DNA of 52,899 bases, filler included, from Bipalium vagum (GCA_037834085.1; 3 parts of 3 records of this genome joined end to end with filler, not necessarily neighbours in it); one strand, 5' to 3'. Counted from the first letter of the whole stretch, positions 601 through 16,501 are shown. Notes: a model not told the origin generated them from the letters alone. Program-made: numbers and translations.

Positions 601-969
601 AAGTTCTTCAGATTTTGTTTAAAACTTTTGTTATTTTGAATAATTTTTTTAAACATATTATCGAGATATTGAGACTTTAACTTCGTGAAAAAGGGAGTAG
701 TCATAGCTGTACAGCTAATATATTATTTAGTTATTGTTTATATTTTGTTGATGTAGTTTGAAATCAATTAATTCTGGCCTGTAGCTATATACATTCCTAT
801 AATACTTTCCCTTTATCAACAAATTTTATTTCTTTAATATTCTGTAACCTCTTTTCGATGTACAAAGTTTCAATGTATTTTATATAATTGGTATTTATCT
901 CTCATTTTCATTCACGCTGGACTCTTCAGGCTAACGATTTCAACGAGATTAAAGAGAGAACAATGTGTA

Positions 970-1255
970 AATATAAAAACCTTTGGTTGTTTGTTAAGGT
1001 TTTCCATAACATAAAGTTATTATGACCGTTTCAGTAAGCCAATAATTAGAATGGAAATATTTCCGTAAGAATTATGGAGATAAAAGGCAAATCCTTCAAA
1101 GAAAAGATATATTTGTTAAGAAAATCATTTCCAAAGTGACAAGTGTTCACACTAATCTTCCTTCATCTATGGCGTCAATATAATAGTTCTTTTTTGCATA
1201 CTGCTCGTCAGACAGCTCTTGAGATCTGAAATTAAGAGCTAACTTGAAGCACATG
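970..1255. repeat. About 285-bp direct duplication, copy 1 (partner 7012-7295); covers the peptide exon and its 3' UTR
   Basis: Base-by-base near identity (over 90% by eye) with 7012-7295. Confidence 0.95.
1147..1225 (-). CDS. Paralogous prepropeptide terminal exon, SQELSDEQYAKK-NYYIDAIDEGRLV-stop (may be an orphan or pseudo-exon)
   Basis: Four nucleotide differences from 7187-7265, frame and acceptor intact, same mature peptide; a repeat element is inserted about 50 nt upstream. Confidence 0.6.
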
Positions 1256-1274
1256 GTTATTTATTTGTTATCAA

Positions 1275-1545
1275 TATAAGGATTGGTTCGAACAATTAGT
1301 TTGCTTTAATTTTTTAAAATAAGGATCTCACCCCTAAATTAACGATTATAAATGTTTTTAATTTAAAGTTTTAAAAATTATTAAGTTACGGTTTTGTAAA
1401 TATTTTTAGTTAAAATTTTAAATAAAAATGGCACAAAAGATTTTGATAGATTTTTATAAAGTAAATAATTTAGTTTTAAAAGATAGTGAGATCCATTTTT
1501 GAAAAGTTGGTTTAAGTGATCGGATTTAATGAAATATTTTATTAT
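1275..1545. mobile_element. Non-autonomous interspersed repeat (MITE-like), related copy at 49938-50225
   Basis: Shared blocks tataagga.tggttcgaa.aattagt, ctcac.cctaaattaacg, gtgag.tccatttt.gaaaagtt.gtttaa...atcggattta.tgaaata. Confidence 0.65.
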
Positions 1546-2091
1546 TGATTTGATATCCCATATATATATATTATTTTAAATGACAACACAAGAATATAAC
1601 TACCGATATAACGATAATAATGATAATAAAAAATAAAATAAAAATAATTTTAATAATAATAATAAAAATAAAAAAATCAATATACTTTGCAGCATACGAT
1701 AAAAAGGTAGAAAGACTAAAAATATGAATTATGAAAAATAAAAATTAATTGATCAACTAATTGCTAAATGTACCCTCAGTTTATAAATCGCAAAAATCTG
1801 AAAAATTAATAATTTTATTAATGACTGTTGATTGAGCACAAGTACTAAGCTTTAATTAATAACAGAGGTTGTAAATTATAATTTTTATTTACATTTTATA
1901 ATTATTAATTATCTGGAAATTCTCTAATTGTCGGTATTGTATTTTTAGATTCTTTATTTTGTTAATCTTTATTCAATATTTAATTTATTATTATTTTTAT
2001 AGTAAAAATTTTTAAAAATAAATTAAAATTATAATAAATAATCTTTTTTCATAATTTTTAACATTTCATCAGATTTTAATCATCTAACGAA

Positions 2092-2251
2092 NNNNNNNNN
2101 NNNNNNNNNNNNNNNNNNNNNNNNNNNNNNNNNNNNNNNNNNNNNNNNNNNNNNNNNNNNNNNNNNNNNNNNNNNNNNNNNNNNNNNNNNNNNNNNNNNN
2201 NNNNNNNNNNNNNNNNNNNNNNNNNNNNNNNNNNNNNNNNNNNNNNNNNNN
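2092..2251. other. Assembly gap (160 N)
   Basis: Run of N. Confidence 1.
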
Positions 2252-2984
2252 TACTTTTCAATGTCAGATTTTCATTTCATTTTTGTTTGCTAAGCAAATC
2301 TTTCGCCAAATCATTTTCAATAGACAAAAGTTTCCTTTGAAGAATTATATTTAACAAATAATGTAATCAGTTTTCGTTTTTTCATCTTATAATAAGTTTT
2401 TTGTTAAATTTAAATCTTTTAATGCTTCATAAAAATAGTTTCATTTTCATGTGCAAGTCTGACCTTTTACAATTAAATCACAAAAGAAAACAAAACAATT
2501 TTGTTTTAATTATTCAAAAAATTACATAATTTACAAAAATAAAATTGAGTAAATTGACATTTTTTTTGTATCGAAAACAAATAATTATTGATTTTTTTAT
2601 AAAAATTTAACTTTTATTAATTAACATTGATTGATTTTAACATTTTAATTTCCTTTCAAAGCATCTGACGGTAATTTTCTAGTCATGTAATATTTTTTAC
2701 AATCAATTTAAGTTACTGTGTTAACTGATATTTGTATTACATCAATTACAGTACGAGGAGAACCACAGATTCGGATCACTGGTAAATGTCCTTGATCGAA
2801 AGGTCAGTGGCACATTCGAGAGATTAAGGTTGGCTAAAGTATTTCGTGCACTCAACTTTACTTTGAGAATTTGAAGCATTTAGGCGCAGGGAAACAACAT
2901 GTGCCAATCATAGGAAATATATTAGCATACAGACAGGTTCTATTTTCGAGAAATATCGATTTCATTTAAGTACTGGTTTGAAGT

Positions 2985-3990
2985 TATTAGGTGAGTCAGA
3001 AAGTAACCGCGTTTTCCTAATTTTTAAAATTACCGTATTTTCAGGTACATAATACGCACATGTGTATCATAAGCACGTGGTTTTTAAAAATTTTATTTCA
3101 CGCCTTAAAAAACATTTGTATAATACGCTTTAATATATAATACGCATGAATTGGATCTGTTATATCACAATATTTTAAATGTTTAAATATACCATTTTTA
3201 TATTATATAATATTCTTATATTAAAATATAGAAAATATTTGTTTTAATATTAAAATTAAGTATTTCAAATTTATTAATGTTATTATAATTCTTACTATTA
3301 AAACAATTTAAATTATTATTTTTTAAAATACTTTTTCATAAGTAACTCATTAATAACTCATAAGTAGCGACTGAGCATATGTAAAAAATCCTCGACTGTA
3401 GTCCTACTACAGTTAAGACCTACTTACATATGATTGGAAAGTCATATAAGGCGGGTGACTGAGTACCCCATGAATCTACCGAAAAAAATTAAGCTGTTTG
3501 ACTATCTTTTTGTCAATCACTGATTCTGAAGAACAACAGTGATCCGTTTCAAATCAGACAATTGATGGCAACAAAAACTGTGATCAATTTGACAAATTAA
3601 ATAACTTGATTAAAATTTGTCCATCTTCATTAAACAGAAAAGGTGTCATTTTTCATCAGGAAAATGCCCGGCCACACATCTTGAAGATCACATCTAAAAA
3701 AATTAAAGACTTAGGATGGAAAGTTATCGCTCAGCCATCATATAGCCCAGACATTGCTCCACCAGATTTTCACCTCTTCAGATCTTTGCAGCACTTCTTG
3801 CTTGGAAAAAGATTTCAAAATGAAGATCATATCAAAAAGGAGATCCAATCATTTATTTATCCAGATCCATTTATTATTGACCCTAAATATTCCTCGTCAT
3901 TTGAAAAACGGATGAAATGCTTGGTTGACAAGTGGCAGACTATAGTAAAAAATATATTTTATTGTTTTATTGTATTATTATTTATTGGTG
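2985..3990 (+). mobile_element. Decayed mariner transposon, interrupted at about 3031 by a Tc2/pogo-like end
   Basis: TIR-like ttaggtgagtcagaaagtaaccgcg; *VPHES (WVPHEL), HQENARPH, YSPDIAPPDFHLFRSLQ; stops and an internal deletion; taccgtattttc...taatacgcac end at 3031. Confidence 0.9.
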
Positions 3991-5169
3991 TAATATTGGT
4001 ATTTTTTATTGGAGGAAAAAAGGTAAAAGATCCGAATTTAAGTACAAAAGATAAACAATTTTAATAATTTTAAAGATTTACACAAGTAAATTGTAAAGAT
4101 AGGCGCACTTTTAAACAAACCGCAATGAAAAACATTTTAAAGAATAATAAATGTGAATACACAAAAATACACTTTAAATACAAAAGTTGTTTTTAATTTT
4201 ATATTATTATTTATAAATATTGGCCAGGCTTAATGCTATCAAATATATAAAACAAAAAATATGCAAAAAAAATAATATCATTTTTTGTTATTAAAAAGTT
4301 GGAAAATATTGATAAAAAAATCGACTTTTTTTTATTGATAAATTTTATAATTTATTTTTTATTTTTAAAAAATTTTTTAAATAAAATTTTTGGCTACCAG
4401 CACCGTAGATTACTGTGATGAGGGAATTTTATTTATATTTTAAAATACTTTATATTTTTGAATAATCAGATTACGAATTGAAGATAAGGCGGAATAACGT
4501 AAACTGAGAAAGAAATAAAATAATAATTGATATTATCAAGTATTATTTGATAATTGATGAACGTTGAGCAAGGCAACAAAACGAGTCGTTGTTCGTAGTC
4601 TCAATTAAAGTTGGTAATTAGAATCGGTTCTCACTCCTGGTCTTCGCTTGCCGGGGCAACCCGACCCATCGATCGGGGTAAAAGAAGCTGAGTACAATGT
4701 AAACGAAGAACAAAATGTTTTCAGATGCATCAGAAACATTTGGGGATTTTAATTACATCAGTTTTCTCTTAAATACCAATGGTATATTATTGAAAAACCA
4801 TGAAAAAAGGTCAAATGTACACAGACCATTAAAACAAGCAAGCTTCACGACTAAACACATTTTCATCTTTAATTAAAAATATGCGGAAGAAATAAAAAAA
4901 AACTTAAGAATGTGTGGGGAGACTAATGATAAATAAGTGAAAAAACATTTTTAAAAAGTAAATCACCGCCAATGAAATGAAGAAATAAATATATAAAATG
5001 TTTTCGTAGGATTTGTTTAAATTTTTAAATTATTTATTTATTTATTTCACAATAATAAAATACAAAATCTTTTAATTTAACTTTATGTTTGTGAGGGCGT
5101 TTAGAAACGTTTTGAAAGCGACGGGATTGGTTTGACAATACAGCAAAACTGTAGAGGTCATTTTAATAT

Positions 5170-6250
5170 TCATTTCGAAACAAAAAAAATTATTCAAAAT
5201 AATGGACATTGTTTCACACATTTCTTCCATTTTCCAGTCAATGTTTGGATGCCATCCCAAAAAAAAACTTTTCTGGTTTCGAGGCGAACTATCCAGAGAT
5301 CTCAGTGTTGTTTAGCAAATCTATGTGCCATTGAACGGAACAGGTGAAAATCAGAAGGATCACGATCTGGTAAATACACCGGGTGGGTGAGTACTTCCTA
5401 TTTCATATCTTTTAACATACTTTTAACTGCTTTAGAATTGTGAGGCGCTGCGTTGTCATGTAGAAGAATTACTATTAACTATTAAAGACTGATTCAGCCG
5501 GGCTATTTGGTTTTTGTATCTCTCCGAACTAACACTTTCACTTGGTTGAGAAGCTCATGGTACACAACACCTTGATGAACCCATGCTTTGGGATTTTCAA
5601 AATAGATTCACTTTTCATCTCCTGTCAATAGTCGATGAAAGAAAAACTTTCTTTCGTGTCGTTGTAAGATCATGTCACTGACTACTTTTCTGTTTTCTAG
5701 TTGTCTTTAATTCAGTAGATGAAACAACCATTTTCCTACCTTTAAAATCCTACCAATATCATGTAGAGTACCCGATAATTGCTTGCTGAGTAACACATAT
5801 TCTTATGGCAAGTTGATTTTGCGATTGACAGGTATCTTCATCCAATAACTTTTGTAAATTTTGGTTTTCAAATTTGGAAGTACGGCCTGAGCGTTCTTTA
5901 TCCTTTACACTGAAATCATTACTTCTGAAGCGGTGAAACCAAAGTTCGTGTGTGTCCTGAGATACTACATATTTTCCATAAACATCGTATAATATCCTGC
6001 AGCTTTCTGCGGCAGTTATGTTCATCATGAAGTAATGAAAGAGAACTAGTGTTCTTTGCTTGGCTTAAGTGATGACATATTTAGATCTAAAAAATTTGAA
6101 ATTTTTAACATATTATGAACATATCAATGATTGCCCTATAATCAGATATTATTCAAACAAATTGATTTATATTTCATTTCGCAATTATATTTCGATATCT
6201 CACTAAATCTATTTTAAATAAATCCGCATTATTTATTTTATCTCTTATAT
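5170..6250 (-). mobile_element. Decayed mariner, Mos1/mauritiana-like
   Basis: AESCRILYDVYG..WFHRFRSNDF..KERSGR, TGDEK*IYFENP, LLHDNAAPH, PSDFHLFRSMAH; several stops and frameshifts. Confidence 0.9.
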
Positions 6251-6372
6251 AAATGTTTGAACTTGAACGTTGAAAAACGACATTTATTTCTGACCAACCA
6301 ATATCATTTCCATAAATAAACTTATTTTTTTAACTAGACATATTTATTTGACTTGACGGGATTAATTGTAAA

Positions 6373-7013
6373 ATGGAAAAAATTGAATATCGAGGAATTA
6401 TAAAATTGTTTGTCCTGGAAGTGATCCACAAGGTGGGCTTTGAAACTTAAACAAGTTCATACGGTGATTAAAGCTGATCCACTGACATCAAAAATCATTC
6501 AAGAAATCCATGATATAGGGTTGGATGATCGATGGATAAAAGTGAGAAAAATATGTTCTGCCACAGGCATTTCAGTAGAACGCTTAAGGTATTATTTGCA
6601 TGAAAACTTAAAGAAGGAAAATCCTTGTACAAGATGGGTACCGCATCTGCTTACAATCGCTTGCGATAAGGATAAGTGTAAAGAACTTGGATGAGAAATC
6701 GTATCTCGTCCACCATATTCGTCAGACACGGCGCCATTTGATTTCCATTTATTTAGATCGATGGTACATGGACTGTCAAAACGGAGCTTTTGCAAATATT
6801 TTGTAATATATGAAATTCTATTTTGGCTTGATGAATGAATTTTATCTAAAGAAAAAAATTTCTTTTACAATGGCATTCACAAGTTACCAGAAATTTAGAC
6901 CAATGTTATTGCTCACAATAGGAAATATGTATAAGATAATTACATGTTGTGTCTTTAAAATAAATGCATTTATTTTTTTAAAAAACTTCCGCAGAATTAA
7001 CTGCTACACCTAA
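6373..7013 (+). mobile_element. Chimeric or deleted mariner (Himar1/irritans-like N-half joined to a mauritiana-like C-terminus)
   Basis: MEKIEYRGIIKLF, DDRWIKVRKI, RWVPHLLT, then PPYSSDTAPFDFHLFRSMVHGL, FFYNGIHKLPE and TIR ...ctgctacacctaa|ta. Confidence 0.8.
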
Positions 7014-7295
7014 TATAAAAACCTTTGGCTGTTTGTTAAGGTTTTCCATAATATAAAGTTATTATGACCGTTACAGTAAACCAATAATTAGAATGGAAAT
7101 ATTTCCGTAAGAATTATGGAGATAAAAGTCAAATCCTTTAAAGAAAAGATATTTGTTCAGAAAATCATTTTCAAATTGACAAGTGTTCACACTAATCTTC
7201 CTTCATCTATGGCATCAATATAATAGTTCTTTTTTGCATACTGCTTGTCATAGAGCTCTTGAGATCTGAAGTTAAGTGCTAACTTGAAGCTCATG
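7012..7295. repeat. About 285-bp direct duplication, copy 2 (partner 970-1255)
   Basis: As above; the left edge abuts a mariner terminal repeat at a TA. Confidence 0.95.
7187..7265 (-). CDS. Paralogous prepropeptide terminal exon, SQELYDKQYAKK-NYYIDAIDEGRLV-stop
   Basis: ttcag|A phase-2 acceptor, TGA stop; mature peptide 10/13 identical to that of the 13.6 kb gene; upstream exon(s) uncertain. Confidence 0.72.
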
Positions 7296-7528
7296 TTAAC
7301 TGTCTATTTTTTAAAAATATTATCGATATAATAGTTAGCAAATTGAAGTGAAAGTACATGGTCACTTCTTTTGAGAAATAGTGAAATTATCACTTCTGTT
7401 ACCTGATATCAAATTGATCAAATACATATTGCAGAAAGTGGTCAGAAAGTGTATTCAGCTAGTACGAGACTACATTGAAAAATAAATTGTTTTTATCTTT
7501 TGATTTTGTTGTTTTTATATTTATTCAC

Positions 7529-7651
7529 CGTACTTTTCAACCCACTCTCATCCATGTCATCCACATAATTTTTATTGATGGAATAATGGATAGGTTTTCT
7601 TCTAAGAGAATTCTGTCTGAAAATCTTTTGGATTCGTCTATTCAAATAGAA
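7529..7651 (-). CDS. Candidate diverged prepropeptide exon FYLNRRIQKIFRQNSLRRKPIHYSINKNYVDDMDESGLKST
   Basis: Pyrimidine-rich ttttctcctag acceptor, plus an internal phase-2 ttttcag|A acceptor at 7617; gtgaat donor. SLRR and NYVDDMDESGL echo ALRR and NYYIDAIDEGRL of the paralogs. Confidence 0.45.
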
Positions 7652-8559
7652 CTAGGAGAAAATGTGATATTTCTTGTGTTATTTTAAAAAATATTAAAAC
7701 ATTAATATTTCCTAATATTTTATATTATATAATCATATAATTTTAAATCTGTTTATAAATGTAATGAGATCATTTCAACGTTACTTATTTCAAAATATGA
7801 TTACACTTCACACAGTCATCTTAAATTAAACATTTTAATGTTGTCCGGGTTTTTGTTTCCTACATTGTATGGGGTGACTAAGAAAGTCCTCCAAGTATAT
7901 TCAAGCCAAAACCTTTGTATCCTTAGTCTATTGATCTGATATGATCATTCATTCCTAAACTAAAAGGAATACTCTCCAAAATGTTAAATGGAAATTGGAC
8001 GAAAAATTTACAAATAAAAATTGAAAACAATTTCCAAAAATAAACACGGAAACTTTATTAAAATTTATCAAAAAACGAAATAAATTAGAAAAAAACCCAA
8101 AACCAAAATTGGTTTTATCTAAGCAAGATAAATTCAATCGGAATTCAATTACAGAGGTCAGGATTCGGTTTAGGTTTTATTAATCTGGGTCGATATCAAT
8201 TGTCCCCGTTCCTTCCATTGTAAATTATTTCGTGGGCAGATAGATTAGCTTACGTTAATTAAAATGAGGAAATTGATAAAGCCCACCATGTTTCTGTGAT
8301 AAAAGTGAATTAGAGGTTTGAGGATTTATTATGAAAACCCATCAAATAATAAATGGATCAAAGTACTTTACTCAACGTCGAATATTTTCTGGGAGGATCT
8401 TTTGAAAACTTTAATTAAATTAAAAAGTATTCACTAGATCCGAATATGTACATAATGAAGCAGGGGAAAGTTTACTTCAGTTACCCCAAGCCTCTGGGAG
8501 ACATTGATTTTGAACAAAGTTTTGATAAATTATTAGCGGTATGCATAAGTTTCCATCGT

Positions 8560-9707
8560 TTAAAGACAAAATTTTTATTGATATTTTGATTTGTTCAATA
8601 AGTCAATACGTTTTTATTGAACAATTTAGGATCATTTATTTAATATAACAAAGTCTGTGGTAGCTTCATTATTCCTCACAGATACAAGTCTCTCTCTGCA
8701 AACAACCTCTCAAGATCTTGTTTATAAACGTATACCAATAAATTAGTTCTGAAGGGAGCTAAACAAATGTAAATCGGAATACACATGGTCTGGATTATAA
8801 AGGTGACTGTGACAATGCATCCCACTCAAGCTCGAGAAATATTTGGCGAAACAAATTGTGGGGAAGACCACCATTTTTCAGTTGACCAGCTCAAGATTTT
8901 TTTGTTGGATGGAAACAGTAGATTTCTGAATTTATATTTTTATTCGTAAGGATTTTCTTGTAGTAGACAAGTCCCTTCCAATCCTATCAGATTGAAAGCA
9001 TAGCCTTCTTCTGGTGAATATCTACTTTTGCTTGCGTCTCCTGTGTTTTATCTTCTTTTAGACGAGCTTCTTTTTCTGTAGAAATTATTGTAAACTATCC
9101 ACTTTTCTTCCCCCTTAATCATGCGCCTGAGAAATGGGTCGCCTTCTTTGAGTTTCATGAGTTGATTGCAAATATCAATTCGATTGACTTTGAATTTCTT
9201 TCAATTCGTACGGAACCCAGACATTCAATTTTTTGATGAAATTAGCTGACTTTTTATGACCGTGAATGGTTCCAACGGATAAATTTAGAGCACTCACAAT
9301 TTCTTTGACCGTCGAATGACTATTTACTTTGATGACAATCGTAACAGGTGTGCCAGGCCGATGAAAATCGACGAAGGAAAACTTTTCAGCCACGGAACCA
9401 CTTCTGGTATTGTCTTTATTCACATTTTCGACATAAACTTTCATTATTTTTTCTGGCCTCAGTGGTTCCTTTTCCTATTTTGAAGTAAAAGAACAAAATT
9501 TTCAGTATATGCTCGTCAAAGTTCTCCATTTAAAATCACTATAAAAACACAAAAATTTTAAAAAATGAGGGTCAAAATGTACTTACATTTCTGTTTTTAA
9601 TGTAAATTATGATGTACTGTAGTATAATGACACATTAACACTAAAAATAATTGGAACCATTTACACTTCTAAAAATAACGGACTGACTTATTGAAAAATC
9701 CAATATA
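8560..9707 (-). mobile_element. Decayed near-full-length mariner
   Basis: HILKILFFYFKIG, WVPYEL, EKWIVYNN, HQKKAMLSI..DWKG, SDLHLFSSLQN; TIR-like end at about 9680-9707. Confidence 0.85.
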
Positions 9708-9714
9708 AATAACA

Positions 9715-9855
9715 TGGTACATTTAATCAAAATATTTCCCATCATGATTAACTAATTTTCCCATCTTTCTAGCCAAAGATTAAAATATTCGGTGAAAAAC
9801 TTTTTTGGGCATGGTTTAAGTAAAATCGACTGATTTTCTGCACCTCTTCAAAACT
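9715..9855 (-). mobile_element. Mariner C-terminal fragment
   Basis: FEEVQK...KLVNHDGKYFD. Confidence 0.5.
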
Positions 9856-12800
9856 ATAATGTACAACAGAAAAACTATGTGGCCTGGTAAATTATGGATA
9901 CCTTTAATACTTCTACTAAAACCTACCTAGTCAATCTAAAGGGACTGACTGTTTTCTTGACATTGTGTAGTTAAGTGTTGTTCAATTCCTCACTTTAAAT
10001 TCTTAATTAAAAATTCAACTAATTTTAGTTCTGTTGAGATGACAAATATTGTGTCGGTATCATTGCAAATATAAACTTATGTCAGTTAGGAGAAATGAGA
10101 AAGATGCAGTTATATATTTAAATGCTGCAGACCTCATATGTGGAATAATGCACATAATGTCTTAAGTCTCATAACACCGTTATTAGAAATAATTTACTCT
10201 ATCGTCATCTGTGTGCGTAAAAATCAAAATTTGATCCATATGCTTATTTTCATACACGTGTTGTTATAATGTCATTCTTACCAATAAGTAGTAAAATAAT
10301 ATTTTTTAAAAGAATACCAATAAGTCAGGTCTGAAGTGGTAAAGTTATTAACAAAATAGAAAAACTAGTACGCAACGGTTCACTCACAATATAACACTAA
10401 TCTTATTTATCAGTAAAACGTTTATCAAATAACATCATATGAACTTGTTGAACAAGTAAGAGTCGGAGGAAGGGGTTCCTTAAAACAAATCCCAAATAGA
10501 TTGTAAGAAAATATTTTAACCAGTACCTGAAATTTCCAAAACTCATAGGTCTTTCTGGTTTTAGAATTACTTATGTTTTATTGCTTATTAAATCTTAGGG
10601 TCTGTTAAGTAGTAGTGAAGTTATCAATTATCGGAGGGATACAATGGGAATTTATTCAAAGTCTTAGTTCAAAAGTGAAAGCAAAAAGACGTTATATTTT
10701 ACAAAAGACAAAAATTAAAGGTAACAAAGGACTTTTATTCAGTTGAAAAAAAAATTATTATAATAGTCATATATGGTGATCTTTTTTGAATAAGCAAACC
10801 ATAACAAAAAGATATGGAACAATTAAACAGATTTGTATTTTATTCGACCAAAGATTTTCTCCTCAAAAAATCAATTTGGACATGATGGGCACCTTTTTAA
10901 TTATTAATTTTTTTTGTTTGAACCTGCCAATGTTAGCATTATGCTAATTCTGAGTATGATTCCCTCATTTAAACAGGCTCCTATTAACATAATAAATGTC
11001 ACTTGAGGTATTCTATGGTACATAGGATGGATAAAACGTTCCCTAAATACATAATTATCCATAAAAGTTTTCTCCCTGGTTTCCCTTCGTTGAGGTCTAA
11101 AGTTTTGTTTTATTGATATTTCTTGCTTTATAAAAATCTTTTATTAAACCAATCTGGAAATTTACCTTTGCAAAAAAAAATTCGAAATAATAATAATATT
11201 AAAATGAAAATGAATTTTTTGCAACATATTTTCATTTTATTCAAATTTAATCAAATTATGATAAAAAAAAGAAAAAAGAAAATTCAATATTAAATTATCA
11301 ATAAAAGAAAAAGAAAAATATTCTGCTGGATAAAGAGTAATGAAATTTCAAAGACATTGTCAAAAATATAAAAGAAAGGATAAGTAATATTTTAAACGAA
11401 TATATTTAAAAATAATATAATAAATTTTGTTTTGCAGCAAAGAGAAAAATGCCTTTGGTTAGCGTCAAGTCTGAGATTTCCATTAATAAATGTTTTAATG
11501 AAATGAAATGCTCACCAAACATGCAAATGATATGGAAATAATTCTTAATATTCGAAAATTCTATTCAAATCATACTATCATCCGCATTATTAAATCAGTT
11601 ATTTTTTCTCCATCATTAATAATATTTTGTTTAAATAAATTAAAAAATATTTTTTATATTTTTCTTGTACTAATCACAGTTGACAATATGGATTTTTTTT
11701 CTGAAAATTATGTTGATTAATTAATTGAAAATTAAATTAAAAAAATAATTTTATTAAAAAAAAAATTTTTTAATTTAATTTAATTTAATTTTTTTAAAAA
11801 ATATTTTTGTTAAAATATATTTTATTTAAAATAAAATAACCAATTAAAAAGTTGAATAATGTGGGTAGTATTATAAATTAAATAAAATAAATTAAAACAT
11901 AAAACAAATAAAATTGTAAACAAAAATAAATAAATAAAATTATTGATTTTTTCAAAAAAAAGAGAAAAATGTCTTTTTATTTAGGAAAAACAATTATTAA
12001 TTAAAATATTAAAATAAATATAAATATAAATACCCCTTAGTTATATTTATATTTATGGAAATAAAATAATAAAATAAAAATAATTCTTCCATTTTAATTT
12101 ATTTTTCTACTGAAAATTTCTATGTTTTGATTTTTTCTATTTTTAAAAATCTTATCAAATATTCATAATTTAATACAAAACTATTTTACATATAAATGAA
12201 TTTAATGAGAGAAAAATTGAGCCTTTTTATTCATTATATGATCCCATTTCGATTTTTCTTAGTGTTCGATCAGAAATTAAATTTTGTTTTTCTGCGAAAA
12301 AGTACATTTTTAAATTTTTTATATTTTTCGTTTCTCTGTAAATAAAATAAATCTAATCTAAATAAATATAATAAATCTTCTTTGGGCTGACACGCCTATT
12401 TTTAATTTAATATTTATCCATTTGTAAATCCTTCATTATATACAAAAATAATAAAACAAGATCATTAAATAAATGGATAATCTAAATAATTTATAATAAA
12501 GGAAATCAATATGTTTAAATCAGATAAAAAAGATCACGTGAATACAGAAATAATAATATTAATAAATTATTTTCGTATTGTATGTATTAACCTAATAAAG
12601 AAATTAATATAAAATAAAACTATATAAATTAAAATAATTATTATATGAATTAAAAAAAATATAATAATTTTAAAAATAAAAATATTTTCAAATTATTGAA
12701 ATGATGTATATAAAATTAAATTAAAATTTTTTAAAAAATTGATTTTTTTTATTGGTTTTAAAATATTTAATCACACTTTGTTTTTTGGGAAAATGAAAAT

Positions 12801-13563
12801 TATTTCATTTTGTTGTAACCTTCATTTGTTTTAATATTCAAATTTAGAATTACTCTGAATATTTTGATCATATAAAGATTTAAATCGAATTAATTAAAAA
12901 TCAAACTTAACAAAATCAACTTTTCGAAACGATTTATAAAAAAAATTTTAAATTGTTAAATTAACCTGACAAGTAAAAAAATAAATAATTTTAAAAAATA
13001 TGTATAATTATATTTAATAATAATAATTCATAGTAAAATTAATGATATTTTAATTTAAATCTCTTATTTATTTTTCAATTATATTAGAGTAGATTTCAAA
13101 ATATAGAAGATGAATTTCCTGGAGATTTTAAATTTTAAATTCTTTTTTTTGTTTAAACTAAATTAACTTTATGTTCATTTTCTTTAGTCCAAAAATATTC
13201 TATTTTTTCATATTAAATTTTCATTCAGCAGTAGAGTCGACTTTCTTGTCGACCTTTACGTATCTCATACGAAAAGTGATTTATAAAGACGTTTACTGTT
13301 TAAAGTAAAATAGTCTACCAATGTTGACGGATATTTCCATCTTTAACCTTTCAAATGAAGCATTTAAACAAAATTTTGAAAAATGTCATAATCAATTAAA
13401 AAATGTTACACATTCCAAAACATACTCTAACATAAATATTAACAAAAACCAAATTATCCATTTTATGCAGTAAAATAGAAACGCCTACTTTTTCTTTAAT
13501 TAATAAAGAAAAAGGAAAGTTTAAACAACAAAATGATCTTGAAAAAACAATTGGTGACGAGTG

Positions 13564-13771
13564 TTACCTTTTAATCAGTCTTCCAGCGTCTATTGCGTCT
13601 ATATAATATGTCCTTTTGGGAGCCGTCTTGACGTAATCTCTTCTCAGGGCATACGGCTGAGCTTTTCTGAATTGAATATACTCATTTTTATGTCACTCAA
13701 TCAATCAGCACTCACTGGAAAATAAAAGAAATCGTCAACATGATCAGTGAAAACCGGAAAAATATGTTCAT
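13564..13771 (-). CDS. Small secreted prepropeptide (putative neuropeptide precursor), 52 aa, complement(join(13564..13666,13716..13771))
   Basis: ATG at 13771; 49-nt gtgagt...ttcag intron (13667-13715); TAA at 13564-13566. Protein MNIFFRFSLIMLTISFIFQKAQPYALRRDYVKTAPKRTYYIDAIDAGRLIKR has a hydrophobic signal peptide and RR/KR sites. The peptide is conserved, with synonymous changes, in paralogous exons at 7187-7265 and 1147-1225. Confidence 0.85.
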
Positions 13772-14124
13772 CTTTATCTTTAATTTTTTGTTTTTATTAA
13801 TAGAATTTATAAGGTGGCTAAAATAATGAAATTCTATTTATTAATGAAATAGAAATAATAATCCGCCAATGAAAAGCTGTCCATTTATTTCAGGATATTT
13901 AGTGGTCAAATGTCATTTCTGCTCATGGGGGACTTTAGCTTTTGGACTTAAATGGGATATTAAGTATCTATAGAAGAAAATTGTGTCAATAAAAATTGTT
14001 TCAATGTTTTCAGATTTATTTTTTATATTTATATTTTTATGTAATTTTATTAATTATCAAAATTTAAATATTATTTATTATATTTTTTGCATTACTTACT
14101 TTATTAATATTTTTTTAAAATTAC

Positions 14125-14790
14125 CATGTAGTGGTTAATTCCCACAAAATTTGACAGATGAAGAAAATGGGTTAAATGTTTCCAAAAATGTTACAGAAAT
14201 TTAACAGACCTCGTTCAAATTTAATTTACAACATATCGGTTGATAAATGTGGGTTTGTTCGTTTGACCCTAAAAGTAAACAAAAATTCACTGGTTGGGTA
14301 TTTGAAGACATATCTCAATAAACAAAAGTTGTTTGGTTCCACAGAGATAAATAGGAAATTATTGAATATTTCCTCGTTTTTAAGAGACACTTGGAAACGA
14401 TAACTTAAGCGAATCAAAGGACCATCAAGGCTTAATGGTATTTAGAAGTTTGCTTACCTCATGTGATTTCCAAAATTAGAAGCAATAATCGAAATCTATA
14501 AATTATTCGTCATCAAGACATACAAATCTCATACAGTCCGTCAAACCATAGATATCACAGCCATTAGAATCTGTAATTAATGGCACAGCCTGTATTCACC
14601 TGACTTATGACTTCTTTATCTCTAAACTATCAAAAAGAAATTACGGGGTAAGCAGTTCTCGTCACTTGAAACAGCTTTTAAAAAATTCAAGGTTTTCGTA
14701 TCTAAACTTAAGAATAAAAAAAAATTCGAAACGAAAATTTGTTCGATCGCATACAAAGGTATGTTAACGTTTATTGGATTGGTTATTTTG
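14125..14790 (+). mobile_element. Decayed mariner transposase fragment
   Basis: IP..LTDEE, KMLQKFNRPRSNLIYNI, WVCSFDPKSKQK..WVFE, YSPDL, KKKLRGKQFSSLE. Confidence 0.75.
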
Positions 14791-15199
14791 CGTTGCTCTG
14801 CAGCAGAATAAGTTAATGTTGGAAAAAAGCTGGTAATTTTCTTTTTTCTTAACACAAGTATTACCTTCTACGATTGTCCTGGGAGATTTATTTCTTACAA
14901 TATATTACAATTTCGTTAACACTTAAACACCAATCAAATGAATTTAAGTTAAGTTGGTGTCGAACTGGGTGGAAACGTCCCATTATTTTACATGATTTTT
15001 CGACAGTTATACATCAAATATTATAAATAATTTAACGTTTGTTTAAATTTGAGCATTTTTAGCTTTTTTTAAAAAAATTTTAATATCAGAAAGTTTTGGT
15101 TCTAGTACTGAATCCGATATTAGTATATCGGATGCTAATTTGAACAGTTTGGTCGTGGTTTGTCATCTATTTGTGACAATGAAAATGAAATTATGTCTA

Positions 15200-16400
15200 C
15201 CTTTACGGAACCATTTGGCAGGTTAAATCTATGTAAGTAGACGCAGAAAAGCATTAAATGCGACGAGAACACATTGATGGATTAAGTGTTCATGGTCGTT
15301 GCAATTGTCGTAATAATGCTACCAGAATATATTTTTTGATTAGACTGCCTTGGAAATTATCCTGGAATGTATCAAAAATAAAACAAATAGTATGCAGTTG
15401 AACTAGTTAGATATATTGGATTGACTATTTTAGTAGGTCTGTACAAATATCGAGAAGAGTCGATAAAATCTATATGATCAAAAGCAGAATGGCGAAAATG
15501 CATAAGCCAGCTTATTATTTGATACAGATTTGAATTAATTACCAAATATATCAGATTTGACTTATGTGGAACCATACAGAGAAGACCTCTTGTCTGTGAA
15601 AGTTCCCATCGATGGGATGTTCTATAAATGGGACCAAAAGTTTTCTAATCACTTTTAATATGTCACTGTTGATGAAACGATTGTGCAGTTCTGAGTACGG
15701 AGTTTCAAGCAGTATATACCTAAAAACCTTCAAAACATGGTATATAGTTCTAGCTCCTTGTGATGAATCAATTGAATAATGTCTTCGAATAATGCATTGT
15801 CTCGGAAAAAATAATGAAACAAATCGACCTCCAGCCAACAGTTCAGAAGAACAAATGTTTTTGGCATTTACGATCGACCTTGTCACAGACATTTTTTTAC
15901 TTCACAGAATCTCTTACGAAAACTAGGTGTTCATAACTTGGGTTTCGAAGGAGTAATATGAAATAATCACTAAGAACCTCCGAAAGAGTTTGTCTACAGA
16001 AAAAATAGGGCTGGTTCATAGATTTTTGGTGTCAGTGCAAATGCAACTTTGATTTCTTATGCGCCTGAAGATAACAGACAGTGGCACTACTGTCAAGTGT
16101 TTATTGATAATTTGACAAAGCAATCATTGATAATATTGGTAAATATTGGGATGATCATTTGGATCAAATGTTGAGAATGCGAAATTAAAACATCAAGATG
16201 GCCAAAATATGTATTTTAACCAATGATTGGTGTCACATCGTTCAACTCAATTTTTCTTTGGCACGAGATCAATGGGCATAAAAACGGAAATCGAAGACAA
16301 TTTCTAAATATACTTGGAGCCGAACTATGTGAAAGTGAATAAGATGATCACGGTTGTATGTACTTTACAAACGCACTTCCTCAATGTAGAACTCCTAATA
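15200..16400 (+). mobile_element. Decayed piggyBac-family transposon
   Basis: YVTVDETIVQF*VRSFKQYIPK.PSKHGI, VTD.FFTS, ATLISYAPEDNR.VALLSS, DHLDQM, SRWPKYVF; many frameshifts. Confidence 0.85.
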
Positions 16401-16501
16401 AAGGGTGGTCAAGGTTTTATTTCCCGATGTTCAAAGGTAAATAAAATTTGAACTGAATGAAATTTTTTAAAACTTTCTTTGGAAATACAAAGAACACAAA
16501 T

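What the first reader, a model, noticed from the sequence alone, without database searches (positions are those of the whole stretch)
1147..13771. Array of peptide-encoding terminal exons that could all splice to one signal-peptide exon (cassette prohormone locus)
Seen: four minus-strand exons begin at a phase-2 'ttcag|A' acceptor (exon starts 13666, 7616, 7265, 1225). Each restores the same CA|A Gln codon and reading frame when joined to the exon at 13716-13771, the only convincing signal-peptide exon I found. The predicted isoforms end in TYYIDAIDAGRLI, NYVDDMDESGL.., and NYYIDAIDEGRLV (twice). Established: the insect orcokinin gene makes A and B precursors by alternative splicing after a shared signal-peptide exon. 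Inference: this is either one gene with mutually exclusive last exons produced by exon duplication, or a tandem family of separate mini-genes whose first exons are diverged or lost in the 2092-2251 gap.
Basis: partly seen in the sequence, partly recalled or inferred. Interest (0 to 1): 0.85.

Follow-up and report, generated by a model that had tools for sequence, protein, structure and literature searches.

The report
Small secreted-peptide gene with duplicated exons

Summary
Three of the four minus-strand exons are real homologues. They start at 13666, 7265 and 1225 and encode a 13-residue peptide ([TN]YY[IL]DAID[AE]GRL[IV]) preceded by a dibasic site. The whole 440-Mb genome holds only five such exons. 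Two pairs of copies differ at 10 to 12 bases but at only one residue, which shows strong purifying selection.

The fourth exon (7616, NYVDDMDESGL) lies entirely in two transposon fragments that recur at least 205 times in the genome. I treat it as a chance ORF.

The exon at 13666-13568 is 99 nt with phase 2 at both ends, and it ends in AAAAG|GTAACA, an ordinary donor for this genome. Its paralogue on contig C54588 has the same signal-peptide exon, a 50-nt intron and the same 99-nt exon, but no stop codon after the donor. The exon is therefore probably internal.

The best model is a linear gene: signal exon, then an exon for peptide 1 (flanked by KR), then a terminal exon for peptide 2 (preceded by KK, followed by the stop). 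The terminal exon sits in a 285-bp unit that was duplicated 6 kb away, and mariner-type insertions fill intron 2.

No homologue turned up in any database or paper. Interest is moderate to low.

The parts
13805..13811 (-). TATAAAT, a possible TATA box 34-40 nt upstream of the start codon
   Evidence: Read directly from the sequence. Its function is inferred only.
13716..13771 (-). Exon 1: start codon plus signal peptide MNIFFRFSLIMLTISFIF and the first two bases (CA) of a Gln codon. Donor is CA|GTGAGT, phase 2.
   Evidence: The paralogue on C54588 has an exon 1 of the same length and phase (MNLAFPVSWVLFLASLMP plus CA|GTTAGT).
13667..13715 (-). Intron 1, 49 nt (GTGAGT...TTCAG)
   Evidence: The paralogue's intron is 50 nt. 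Verified introns of this genome are 41-329 nt.
13568..13666 (-). Exon 2 (type a), 99 nt, phase 2 at both ends. It encodes a spacer (with an RR site), KR, peptide 1 TYYIDAIDAGRLI, then K and two bases of an Arg codon. It ends AAAAG|GTAACA. If left unspliced, AGG then TAA follow at once.
   Evidence: 67 bits. Against the paralogue's core there are 10 nt differences but only 1 aa difference, matched by 0 of 20,000 random mutation sets.
7266..13567 (-). Proposed intron 2 (about 6.3 kb), loaded with transposon fragments. It includes a high-copy element at 8569-9710.
   Evidence: 1222 first-look candidates; mariner-like ORF remnants. Use of this stretch as an intron is inferred, not shown.
7493..7616 (-). 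Not a member of the peptide family.
   Evidence: no profile match.
7566..7673 (-). Fragment of a dispersed repeat (repeat A). It contains the TTCAG|A 'acceptor' at 7616.
   Evidence: Other copies are 87-91% identical and continue on both sides.
7446..7551 (-). Truncated terminal fragment of a mariner-type element. Other copies begin TA|CGAGAGTGGGTTGAAAAGT. It encodes the 'ESGLKSTVNKYKNNKIKR*' tail.
7301..7359 (-). Signal-peptide-like ORF (MYFHFNLLTIISIIFLKNR plus CA|GTTAAC). It would join the 7265 exon across a 35-nt intron. Probably chance.
   Evidence: It is not conserved upstream of the 1225 or C249877 exons. The shortest verified intron is 41 nt.
7187..7265 (-). Exon 3 (type b, terminal), copy 1: spacer SQELYDKQYA, KK, peptide 2 NYYIDAIDEGRLV, then TGA
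   Evidence: 58 bits. Against the C249877 core there are 12 nt differences but only 1 aa difference.
7012..7295 (-). Duplicated unit, copy 1: 30 nt of intron end, exon 3 and about 175 nt of 3' flank
1147..1225 (-). Exon 3 copy 2: spacer SQELSDEQYA, KK, NYYIDAIDEGRLV, then TGA. It differs from copy 1 at 4 nt (2 synonymous, 2 in the spacer).
   Evidence: 57 bits.
970..1255 (-). Duplicated unit, copy 2 (92-96% identical to copy 1; only these two copies exist in the genome)
2092..2251 (.). Assembly gap. It lies in non-coding sequence between the two exon-3 copies. Its continuity was not tested.

Best explanation
The window carries one of two paralogous genes of a small family that encodes a secreted precursor for two acidic, non-amidated 13-residue peptides.

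Proposed structure on the minus strand:
- Exon 1 (13771-13716) gives the signal peptide.
- After a 49-nt intron, exon 2 (13666-13568, 99 nt, phase 2 at both ends) gives a spacer and peptide 1, TYYIDAIDAGRLI. It is preceded by KR and followed by a KR whose Arg codon the next exon completes.
- Exon 2 is spliced from AAAAG|GTAACA, across a transposon-filled intron of about 6.3 kb, to terminal exon 3 (7265-7187).
- Exon 3 completes that Arg codon (AG|A) and gives a spacer, KK and peptide 2, NYYIDAIDEGRLV, followed by the stop codon.

Prohormone convertase and carboxypeptidase would then release the two peptides.

Exon 3, with its acceptor and 3' flank, was recently duplicated as a 285-bp unit 6 kb further downstream (1225-1147). 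That copy may serve as an alternative last exon yielding the same mature peptide, or it may be idle. Exons 2 and 3 are themselves old duplicates of one peptide exon. That common origin is why every acceptor has the same phase and also fits the exon-1 donor. The 7616 'exon' is not part of the gene.

Shown here: the homology, copy number, selection, splice-signal fit and transposon origin of 7616. Inferred: the splicing order, secretion, peptide processing and signalling function.
For: - **Copy number.** There are five copies of the peptide exon in 440 Mb. Two are type-a copies, each directly behind a signal-peptide exon with a 49- or 50-nt intron. Three are type-b terminal copies, two of which are a recent duplicate.
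- **Type-specific characters are conserved across the two genes**. Type a has KR before and after the peptide, T first and I last. Type b has KK before the peptide, N first, V last and a stop codon. In addition, the type-a exon ends in AAAAG|GT in both genes and is 99 nt in both.
- **Exon 2 must splice in the paralogue.** Its exon 2 has no stop after the donor, and read-through would add 24 junk residues.
- **The exon-2 donors are normal here.** GTAACA and GTATTC lie within the range of 11 verified donors of this genome, which include GTAAAC, GTATTA and GTAATA.
- **Purifying selection.** The cores differ at 10 or 12 nt but only 1 aa, and 0 of 20,000 random mutation sets do as well. The spacers diverge freely, as in neuropeptide precursors.
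- **The duplicated unit is not a transposon.** It occurs only twice in the genome.
- **7616 is transposon sequence**.
- **Intron 2 holds high-copy elements**.
Against: - There is no transcript evidence.
- In the window's own gene a TAA follows the exon-2 donor at once. A two-exon product ending after peptide 1 is therefore equally possible.
- The paralogue's exon 2 and its type-b exon lie on different contigs that do not overlap. Their linkage is assumed.
- The paralogue's type-b exon has a very different codon bias (GC3 0.93, against 0.07 for its supposed exon 2).
- All five peptide-exon acceptors are CAG, whereas 8 of 11 verified acceptors of this genome are TAG.
- A local signal-like ORF exists upstream of the 7265 exon.
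Confidence: 0.5

Rival explanations
1. Exon 1 splices alternatively and directly to exon 2, to the 7265 exon or to the 1225 exon, so each transcript carries one peptide. This may happen alongside the linear form through skipping of the symmetric 99-nt exon 2.
For: All three homologous acceptors are in phase 2 and restore CAA (Gln) after the exon-1 donor. Exon 2 is 99 nt, so skipping it keeps the frame. The window's exon 2 has an immediate TAA if unspliced, so it can act as a last exon. Insect orcokinin genes give A and B transcripts (PMC4237046; PMC6585902).
Against: The phase match follows from common descent of the exons and needs no selection for cassette use. The paralogue's exon 2 cannot be a last exon. 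One of the four proposed cassettes is transposon sequence. No transcripts were available.
Confidence: 0.2
2. A cluster of separate mini-genes. The 7265 exon uses its own first exon (7359-7301, 35-nt intron). The 1225 copy has lost its first exon, or that exon is hidden in the 2092-2251 gap.
For: The ORF MYFHFNLLTIISIIFLKNR has a strong hydrophobic core, ends in the same CA|GT phase-2 configuration and lies in single-copy sequence.
Against: It is not conserved upstream of the 1225 copy or of the C249877 type-b exon, and it shows no DNA similarity to exon 1. Comparable signal-like phase-2 ORFs start at about a dozen places on this strand. The 35-nt intron is shorter than the 41-nt minimum among 11 verified introns. 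Only two signal-exon-plus-type-a units exist for three type-b exons.
Confidence: 0.12
3. The gene is only exons 1 and 2, stopping after peptide 1. The type-b copies at 7.2 kb and 1.2 kb are untranscribed relics of old duplications.
For: A TAA follows the KR codons directly, and an ATTAAA lies about 55 nt downstream. The two type-b copies differ about equally in coding and flanking sequence (about 5%), so recent constraint cannot be demonstrated.
Against: The type-b core differs from the paralogue's at 12 nt but only 1 residue, and it keeps its acceptor, KK site and stop codon. That requires long-term selection on at least one copy.
Confidence: 0.08

Closest known systems
Pedal peptide / orcokinin (PP/OK) type neuropeptides, especially peptides from insect orcokinin genes that resemble orcokinin B (for example SLDGIGGGNLVG and NLDGLGGGHLLRQT; PMC4237046) and crayfish orcokinin NFDEIDRSGFGFN (PMC5656890)
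   Same: These are short, acidic, non-amidated peptides released at basic sites from a secreted precursor. The motif is shared: hydrophobic residue, D, x, [IL], x, x, G, x, L, [IV]. IDAIDEGRLV and LDGIGGGNLV are identical at five of ten positions.
   Different: No statistically significant sequence match could be obtained. There are only two peptide copies, one per exon, instead of many copies in one exon. A Tyr-Tyr lies ahead of the motif and the glycine run is replaced by D-[AE]-G. The host genome gave no hit for arthropod cuticle proteins and has tandem-DBD nuclear receptors, so it is probably not an arthropod.
Insect orcokinin gene with A and B transcripts made by alternative splicing after shared 5' exons
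   Same: A signal-peptide exon is followed by several phase-compatible exons that encode related peptides.
   Different: In this window the downstream exons encode near-identical peptides, not two classes. The supposed 'A-like' exon (7616) is transposon sequence. Alternative splicing is not shown.
Tandem exon duplication giving either additive or mutually exclusive exons
   Same: Exons 2 and 3 are paralogous and share their acceptor phase. Exon 3 was duplicated again as a 285-bp unit that includes its splice acceptor.
   Different: The duplicated exon is the terminal, stop-containing exon and lies 6 kb away. Classical mutually exclusive pairs are internal exons that lie close together.

Membership tests
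Neuropeptide / peptide-hormone precursor (generic) | N-terminal signal peptide | tested here: inconclusive
   Exon 1 encodes Met plus a hydrophobic core (9-residue Kyte-Doolittle mean of 2.7), and the paralogue has the same layout. No dedicated signal-peptide predictor was available.
Neuropeptide / peptide-hormone precursor (generic) | Conserved short peptide bounded by dibasic cleavage sites, with poorly conserved spacers | tested here: met
   KR or KK precedes the peptide in all five copies, and KR or a stop codon follows it. Ten invariant columns fall in or beside the 13-residue core, while the spacers diverge. Selection test.
Neuropeptide / peptide-hormone precursor (generic) | Expression in neurons or endocrine cells, and detection of the mature peptide | not testable with these tools
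PP/orcokinin-type neuropeptides | Sequence motif of the family (as in NFDEIDRSGFGFN and xLDG[IL]GGGxL[LV]) | tested here: inconclusive
   There is only a motif-level resemblance, compared by eye with peptides quoted in PMC4237046 and PMC5656890. No profile or database search gave a hit.
PP/orcokinin-type neuropeptides | Non-amidated C-terminus (no Gly before the cleavage site) | tested here: met
   Peptide 1 ends in Ile before KR. Peptide 2 ends in Val before the stop codon.
PP/orcokinin-type neuropeptides | Many tandem peptide copies in one precursor | tested here: not met
   There are at most two copies per gene, one per exon. Only five copies exist in the genome.
   Frame compatibility is confirmed, but no RNA data were available.
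   The 7616 cassette is made of transposon fragments with at least 205 candidate copies genome-wide, and it does not match the family profile.

The most novel reading that the evidence does not exclude
This is a lineage-restricted, orcokinin-like peptide gene in a probably spiralian animal. Exon duplication has produced a set of interchangeable peptide exons. The signal exon, the symmetric 99-nt exon and two copies of the terminal exon would be combined by exon skipping and alternative last-exon choice. That would yield one-peptide and two-peptide prohormones from one promoter, paralleling the insect orcokinin A/B splicing logic outside arthropods.
Probability: 0.15. Interest if true: 0.6.

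Novelty: new member of a known kind. Interest (0 to 1): 0.35.

Why it matters
If the peptides are expressed, this is an unannotated signalling-peptide family. It has no hit among 1.84 billion protein representatives and none in the searchable literature. It comes from a poorly assembled animal genome and has an unusually clear exon-by-exon record of how a peptide precursor grows by exon duplication. It would give neuropeptide researchers two candidate ligands to synthesise and test. It is also a small case study of whether duplicated terminal exons are used alternatively. The finding also carries a caution: an orcokinin-A-like string (NYVDDMDESGL) arose by chance across a transposon junction.

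Tried and rejected
- **RNA evidence.** The look-up of sequencing runs with 6950-13800 returned only one DNA-like holder. The long query may have hidden small RNAs, and the cap is one search.
- **Read laying.** The gap and the assembly therefore stay unchecked, and those places were sent to no later search.
- **Profile search.** The five exons, searched as a profile against 1.84 billion representatives, gave 0 hits.
- **Word-based homologue search.** The paralogue's open frame gave no candidates.
- **ESM Atlas and Pfam.** Nothing usable.
- **Metagenome scan.** A degenerate-pattern scan gave one hit inside a long unrelated ORF without basic flanks. I took it as chance.
- **Literature.** String searches for the peptides found nothing relevant.
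- **Rfam and tRNA scans of 4400-16501.** Nothing.
- **Host phylum.** Nuclear-receptor DBDs are present, but there were no hits for arthropod Chitin_bind_4 or nematode Col_cuticle_N. The controls for those two were silent everywhere, so the negatives are weak.
- **Contig overlap.** I tested whether C54588 and C249877 overlap. They do not.
- **7359-7301 as an exon-1 relic.** DNA alignment showed no similarity to exon 1.
- **Joined (spliced) protein.** All searches were exon by exon, by reference.
Full report
**Observation**

- An ATG at 13771 opens MNIFFRFSLIMLTISFIF. This is followed by CA|GTGAGT, a phase-2 donor after 13716.
- TTCAG|A acceptors lie at 13666, 7616, 7265 and 1225. Each completes a CAA codon and opens a frame.
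- The frames encode TYYIDAIDAGRLI, NYVDDMDESGL and NYYIDAIDEGRLV (twice).

The acceptor string itself is not rare. It occurs 12 times on this strand, and other copies are followed by phase-2 open frames of 32 to 54 codons. The case therefore rests on homology, not on the splice string.

**Which exons are real**

A search of the whole 440-Mb assembly with the 7265 exon, and then with a profile of all copies, found exactly five places.
- Three are in the window: 13665-13573, 7261-7190 and 1221-1150.
- One is on contig C54588 and one is on contig C249877.

The five fall into two types. Type a comprises window 13666 and C54588. Type b comprises window 7265, window 1225 and C249877.

| Feature | Type a | Type b |
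|---|---|---|
| Site before the peptide | KR | KK |
| First residue | T | N |
| Last residue | I | V |
| After the peptide | KR | stop codon |

In both genes the type-a exon ends in AAAAG|GT.

Selection on the peptide core is strong. The core is the 15 codons of the dibasic site plus the peptide.
- The two type-a cores differ at 10 of 45 bases but at one residue.
- The window's type-b core differs from the C249877 core at 12 bases but at one residue.
- In 20,000 random mutation sets of the same size, none kept the protein that well.
- The spacers ahead of the cleavage sites are barely alignable.

This pattern of a conserved peptide with free spacers is typical of a processed peptide precursor.

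**The 7616 exon is transposon sequence**

The 7616 exon is different in kind.
- Its protein search returned 54 places, nearly all matching only the lysine- and asparagine-rich tail.
- A DNA search of 7300-7700 gave at least 205 first-look candidates. They fall into two sharply bounded blocks, 7673-7566 and 7551-7446.
- Other copies of the second block begin just after a TA with CGAGAGTGGGTTGAAAAGT and continue well beyond 7446. It is therefore the truncated terminal end of a mariner-type element.
- Other copies of the first block continue on both sides, so it is an internal fragment of another repeat.
- The homology runs through and past the stop codon of the supposed exon.
- The frame does not match the family profile.

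The acceptor, the body and the stop codon of this 'exon' are all transposon debris. The orcokinin-A-like string NYVDDMDESGL straddles the junction of the two fragments. I regard it as chance.

**Gene structure**

It runs to 13568 and ends in AAAAG|GTAACA.
- It is 99 nt long with phase 2 at both ends.
- The paralogue on C54588 has the same architecture: a 56-nt signal exon (MNLAFPVSWVLFLASLMP plus CA|GTTAGT), a 50-nt intron, and a 99-nt exon ending in AAAAG|GTATTC.
- In the paralogue there is no stop after the donor. Read-through would add 24 unrelated residues, so splicing onward is the natural reading.

To judge the donors I recovered 11 introns from nuclear-receptor DNA-binding domains of this genome. 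I chose the GT...AG pair that restores the conserved domain.
- The introns are 41-329 nt long.
- The donors are loose and AT-rich: GTAAAC, GTAAAT, GTAATA, GTATTA, GTGAGT, GTTGAG and others.

GTAACA and GTATTC are ordinary in this company.

Every type-b exon starts with A in phase 2. Joining the type-a donor to it makes AGA. That completes the KR site after peptide 1, and the frame then runs into spacer, KK, peptide 2 and the stop codon.

The genome thus holds two 'signal exon plus type-a' units and two independent type-b exons, plus one recent duplicate. This fits two three-exon genes.
- In the window's gene, intron 2 would be about 6.3 kb.
- In the paralogue it would be at least 6 kb. There are 4 kb of contig after exon 2 and 2 kb before the type-b exon, with neither a type-b exon nor a signal exon in them.

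Intron 2 of the window contains a high-copy element at 8569-9710 and other mariner remnants.

I did not build or search the joined protein. All searches were done exon by exon, by reference.

**The duplicate terminal exon**

- 7012-7295 and 970-1255 are 92-96% identical.
- The unit covers the last 30 nt or so of the intron, the exon and about 175 nt of 3' flank.
- It occurs only at these two places in the genome, so it is not a mobile element.
- The two exons differ at four bases. Two changes are synonymous (one inside the mature peptide) and two change spacer residues.

The mature peptide is identical in both copies, and constraint since the duplication cannot be measured. The downstream copy could be an alternative last exon or could be idle.

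**Local first exons**

- An ORF at 7359-7301 (MYFHFNLLTIISIIFLKNR plus CA|GTTAAC) would join the 7265 exon across 35 nt.
- A simple scan for ATG-initiated hydrophobic ORFs ending in a phase-2 GT finds about a dozen distinct starts on this strand.
- This ORF is not conserved upstream of the 1225 copy or the C249877 exon, and it shows no DNA similarity to exon 1.
- The 35-nt intron is shorter than any of the 11 verified ones.

I give this model about 0.12.

**The gap**

- 2092-2251 lies between the two exon-3 copies, 866 nt upstream of the 1225 exon.
- No frame of the finding crosses it. The 61-codon 'ORF' listed there is made of unread letters.
- I could not test continuity.
The later scans were restricted to 4400-16501 or to stretches above 6950.
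- The linkage and orientation of 1-2091 therefore rest on the scaffold alone.
- Homology between that segment and the 7-kb region is limited to the 285-bp unit. It is therefore not simply a misplaced second haplotype.

**Expression**

No run on record as RNA holds the stretch. My query was long, which the tool warns can hide a small RNA. Splicing order, alternative exon use and expression are all unverified.

**What it resembles**

- The peptides are acidic, 13 residues long and not amidated.
- The core, IDAID[AE]GRL[IV], resembles peptides predicted from insect orcokinin genes, such as SLDGIGGGNLVG and NLDGLGGGHLLRQT (PMC4237046). It resembles crayfish orcokinin NFDEIDRSGFGFN more loosely (PMC5656890).
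- Pedal peptides and orcokinins are regarded as one bilaterian family (PMC5656890). In termite and locust, A and B orcokinin transcripts were found (PMC4237046), and the orcokinin gene's exon organisation is described as similar across insects (PMC6585902).

The resemblance here is at motif level only, and every search came back empty.
- A profile search of 1.84 billion representatives gave no hit.
- A word-based search found no candidate.
- Pfam and the ESM Atlas gave nothing.
- A metagenome pattern scan gave one chance hit inside a long ORF.
- The peptide strings are absent from the searchable literature.

On the host:
- It is an animal, with 69 nuclear-receptor DBD matches.
- It has tandem-DBD receptors.
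- It gave no hits for arthropod or nematode cuticle families. These negatives are weak because the controls were silent everywhere.
- By my own reading these points suggest a spiralian.

Membership in the PP/OK family therefore stays open. The many-copies-per-precursor feature is not met.

**Verdict**

- The locus is real and under selection.
- The four-way cassette shrinks to one gene with two old paralogous peptide exons and one recent copy of the last exon.
- The most likely product is a linear two-peptide precursor (about 0.5).
- Cassette-type alternative use remains possible (about 0.2).
- The family appears unannotated, but it is a new member of a familiar kind. Interest is 0.35.

Noticed in passing
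window 5759-6028 (-), 3606-4064 (+), 8569-9710, 9175-9444 (-): Mariner-type transposon remnants. One ORF matches the Mos1 transposase HTH domain (HTH_48, E 1.8e-8). Another carries a DDE-like C-terminal stretch by eye but has no Pfam hit. The 8569-9710 block has 1222 first-look candidates in the genome.
   Followed up: partly
L041 (G000:C203944:450-1150) and L042 (G000:C197840:1-650): Nuclear receptors with two DNA-binding domains in tandem, with 41-47-nt introns. From my own knowledge this architecture is typical of flatworms, molluscs and some other spiralians, which hints at the host phylum.
   Followed up: partly
L018 (G000:C249877) 2060-2152 against L017 (G000:C54588) 3401-3499: The paralogue's terminal peptide exon uses almost only G/C-ending codons (GC3 0.93). 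Its presumed exon 2 uses almost none (GC3 0.07), and the flanks of both are AT-rich. This is unexplained and is a mild argument against their being one gene.
   Followed up: no
L036-L047 (nuclear-receptor loci) against the peptide exons: Eight of 11 verified acceptors in this genome are TAG and only one is CAG. All five peptide-exon acceptors are CAG.
   Followed up: no
Nothing was laid. The stretch was left alone afterwards.
   Followed up: no
L017 3449-3490 against window 7233-7193: The paralogue's type-a core and the window's type-b core have no synonymous codon differences (88% DNA identity over 42 nt), although they differ at five residues. This could be shared AT-biased codon choice or old gene conversion between exon types.
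   Followed up: no
L035 (SDBT01008927.1) 966-998 (-): A metagenome contig encodes AYYIDAIDEGRF inside a long ORF without basic flanks. I take it as a chance match to the degenerate pattern, not a relative.
   Followed up: yes
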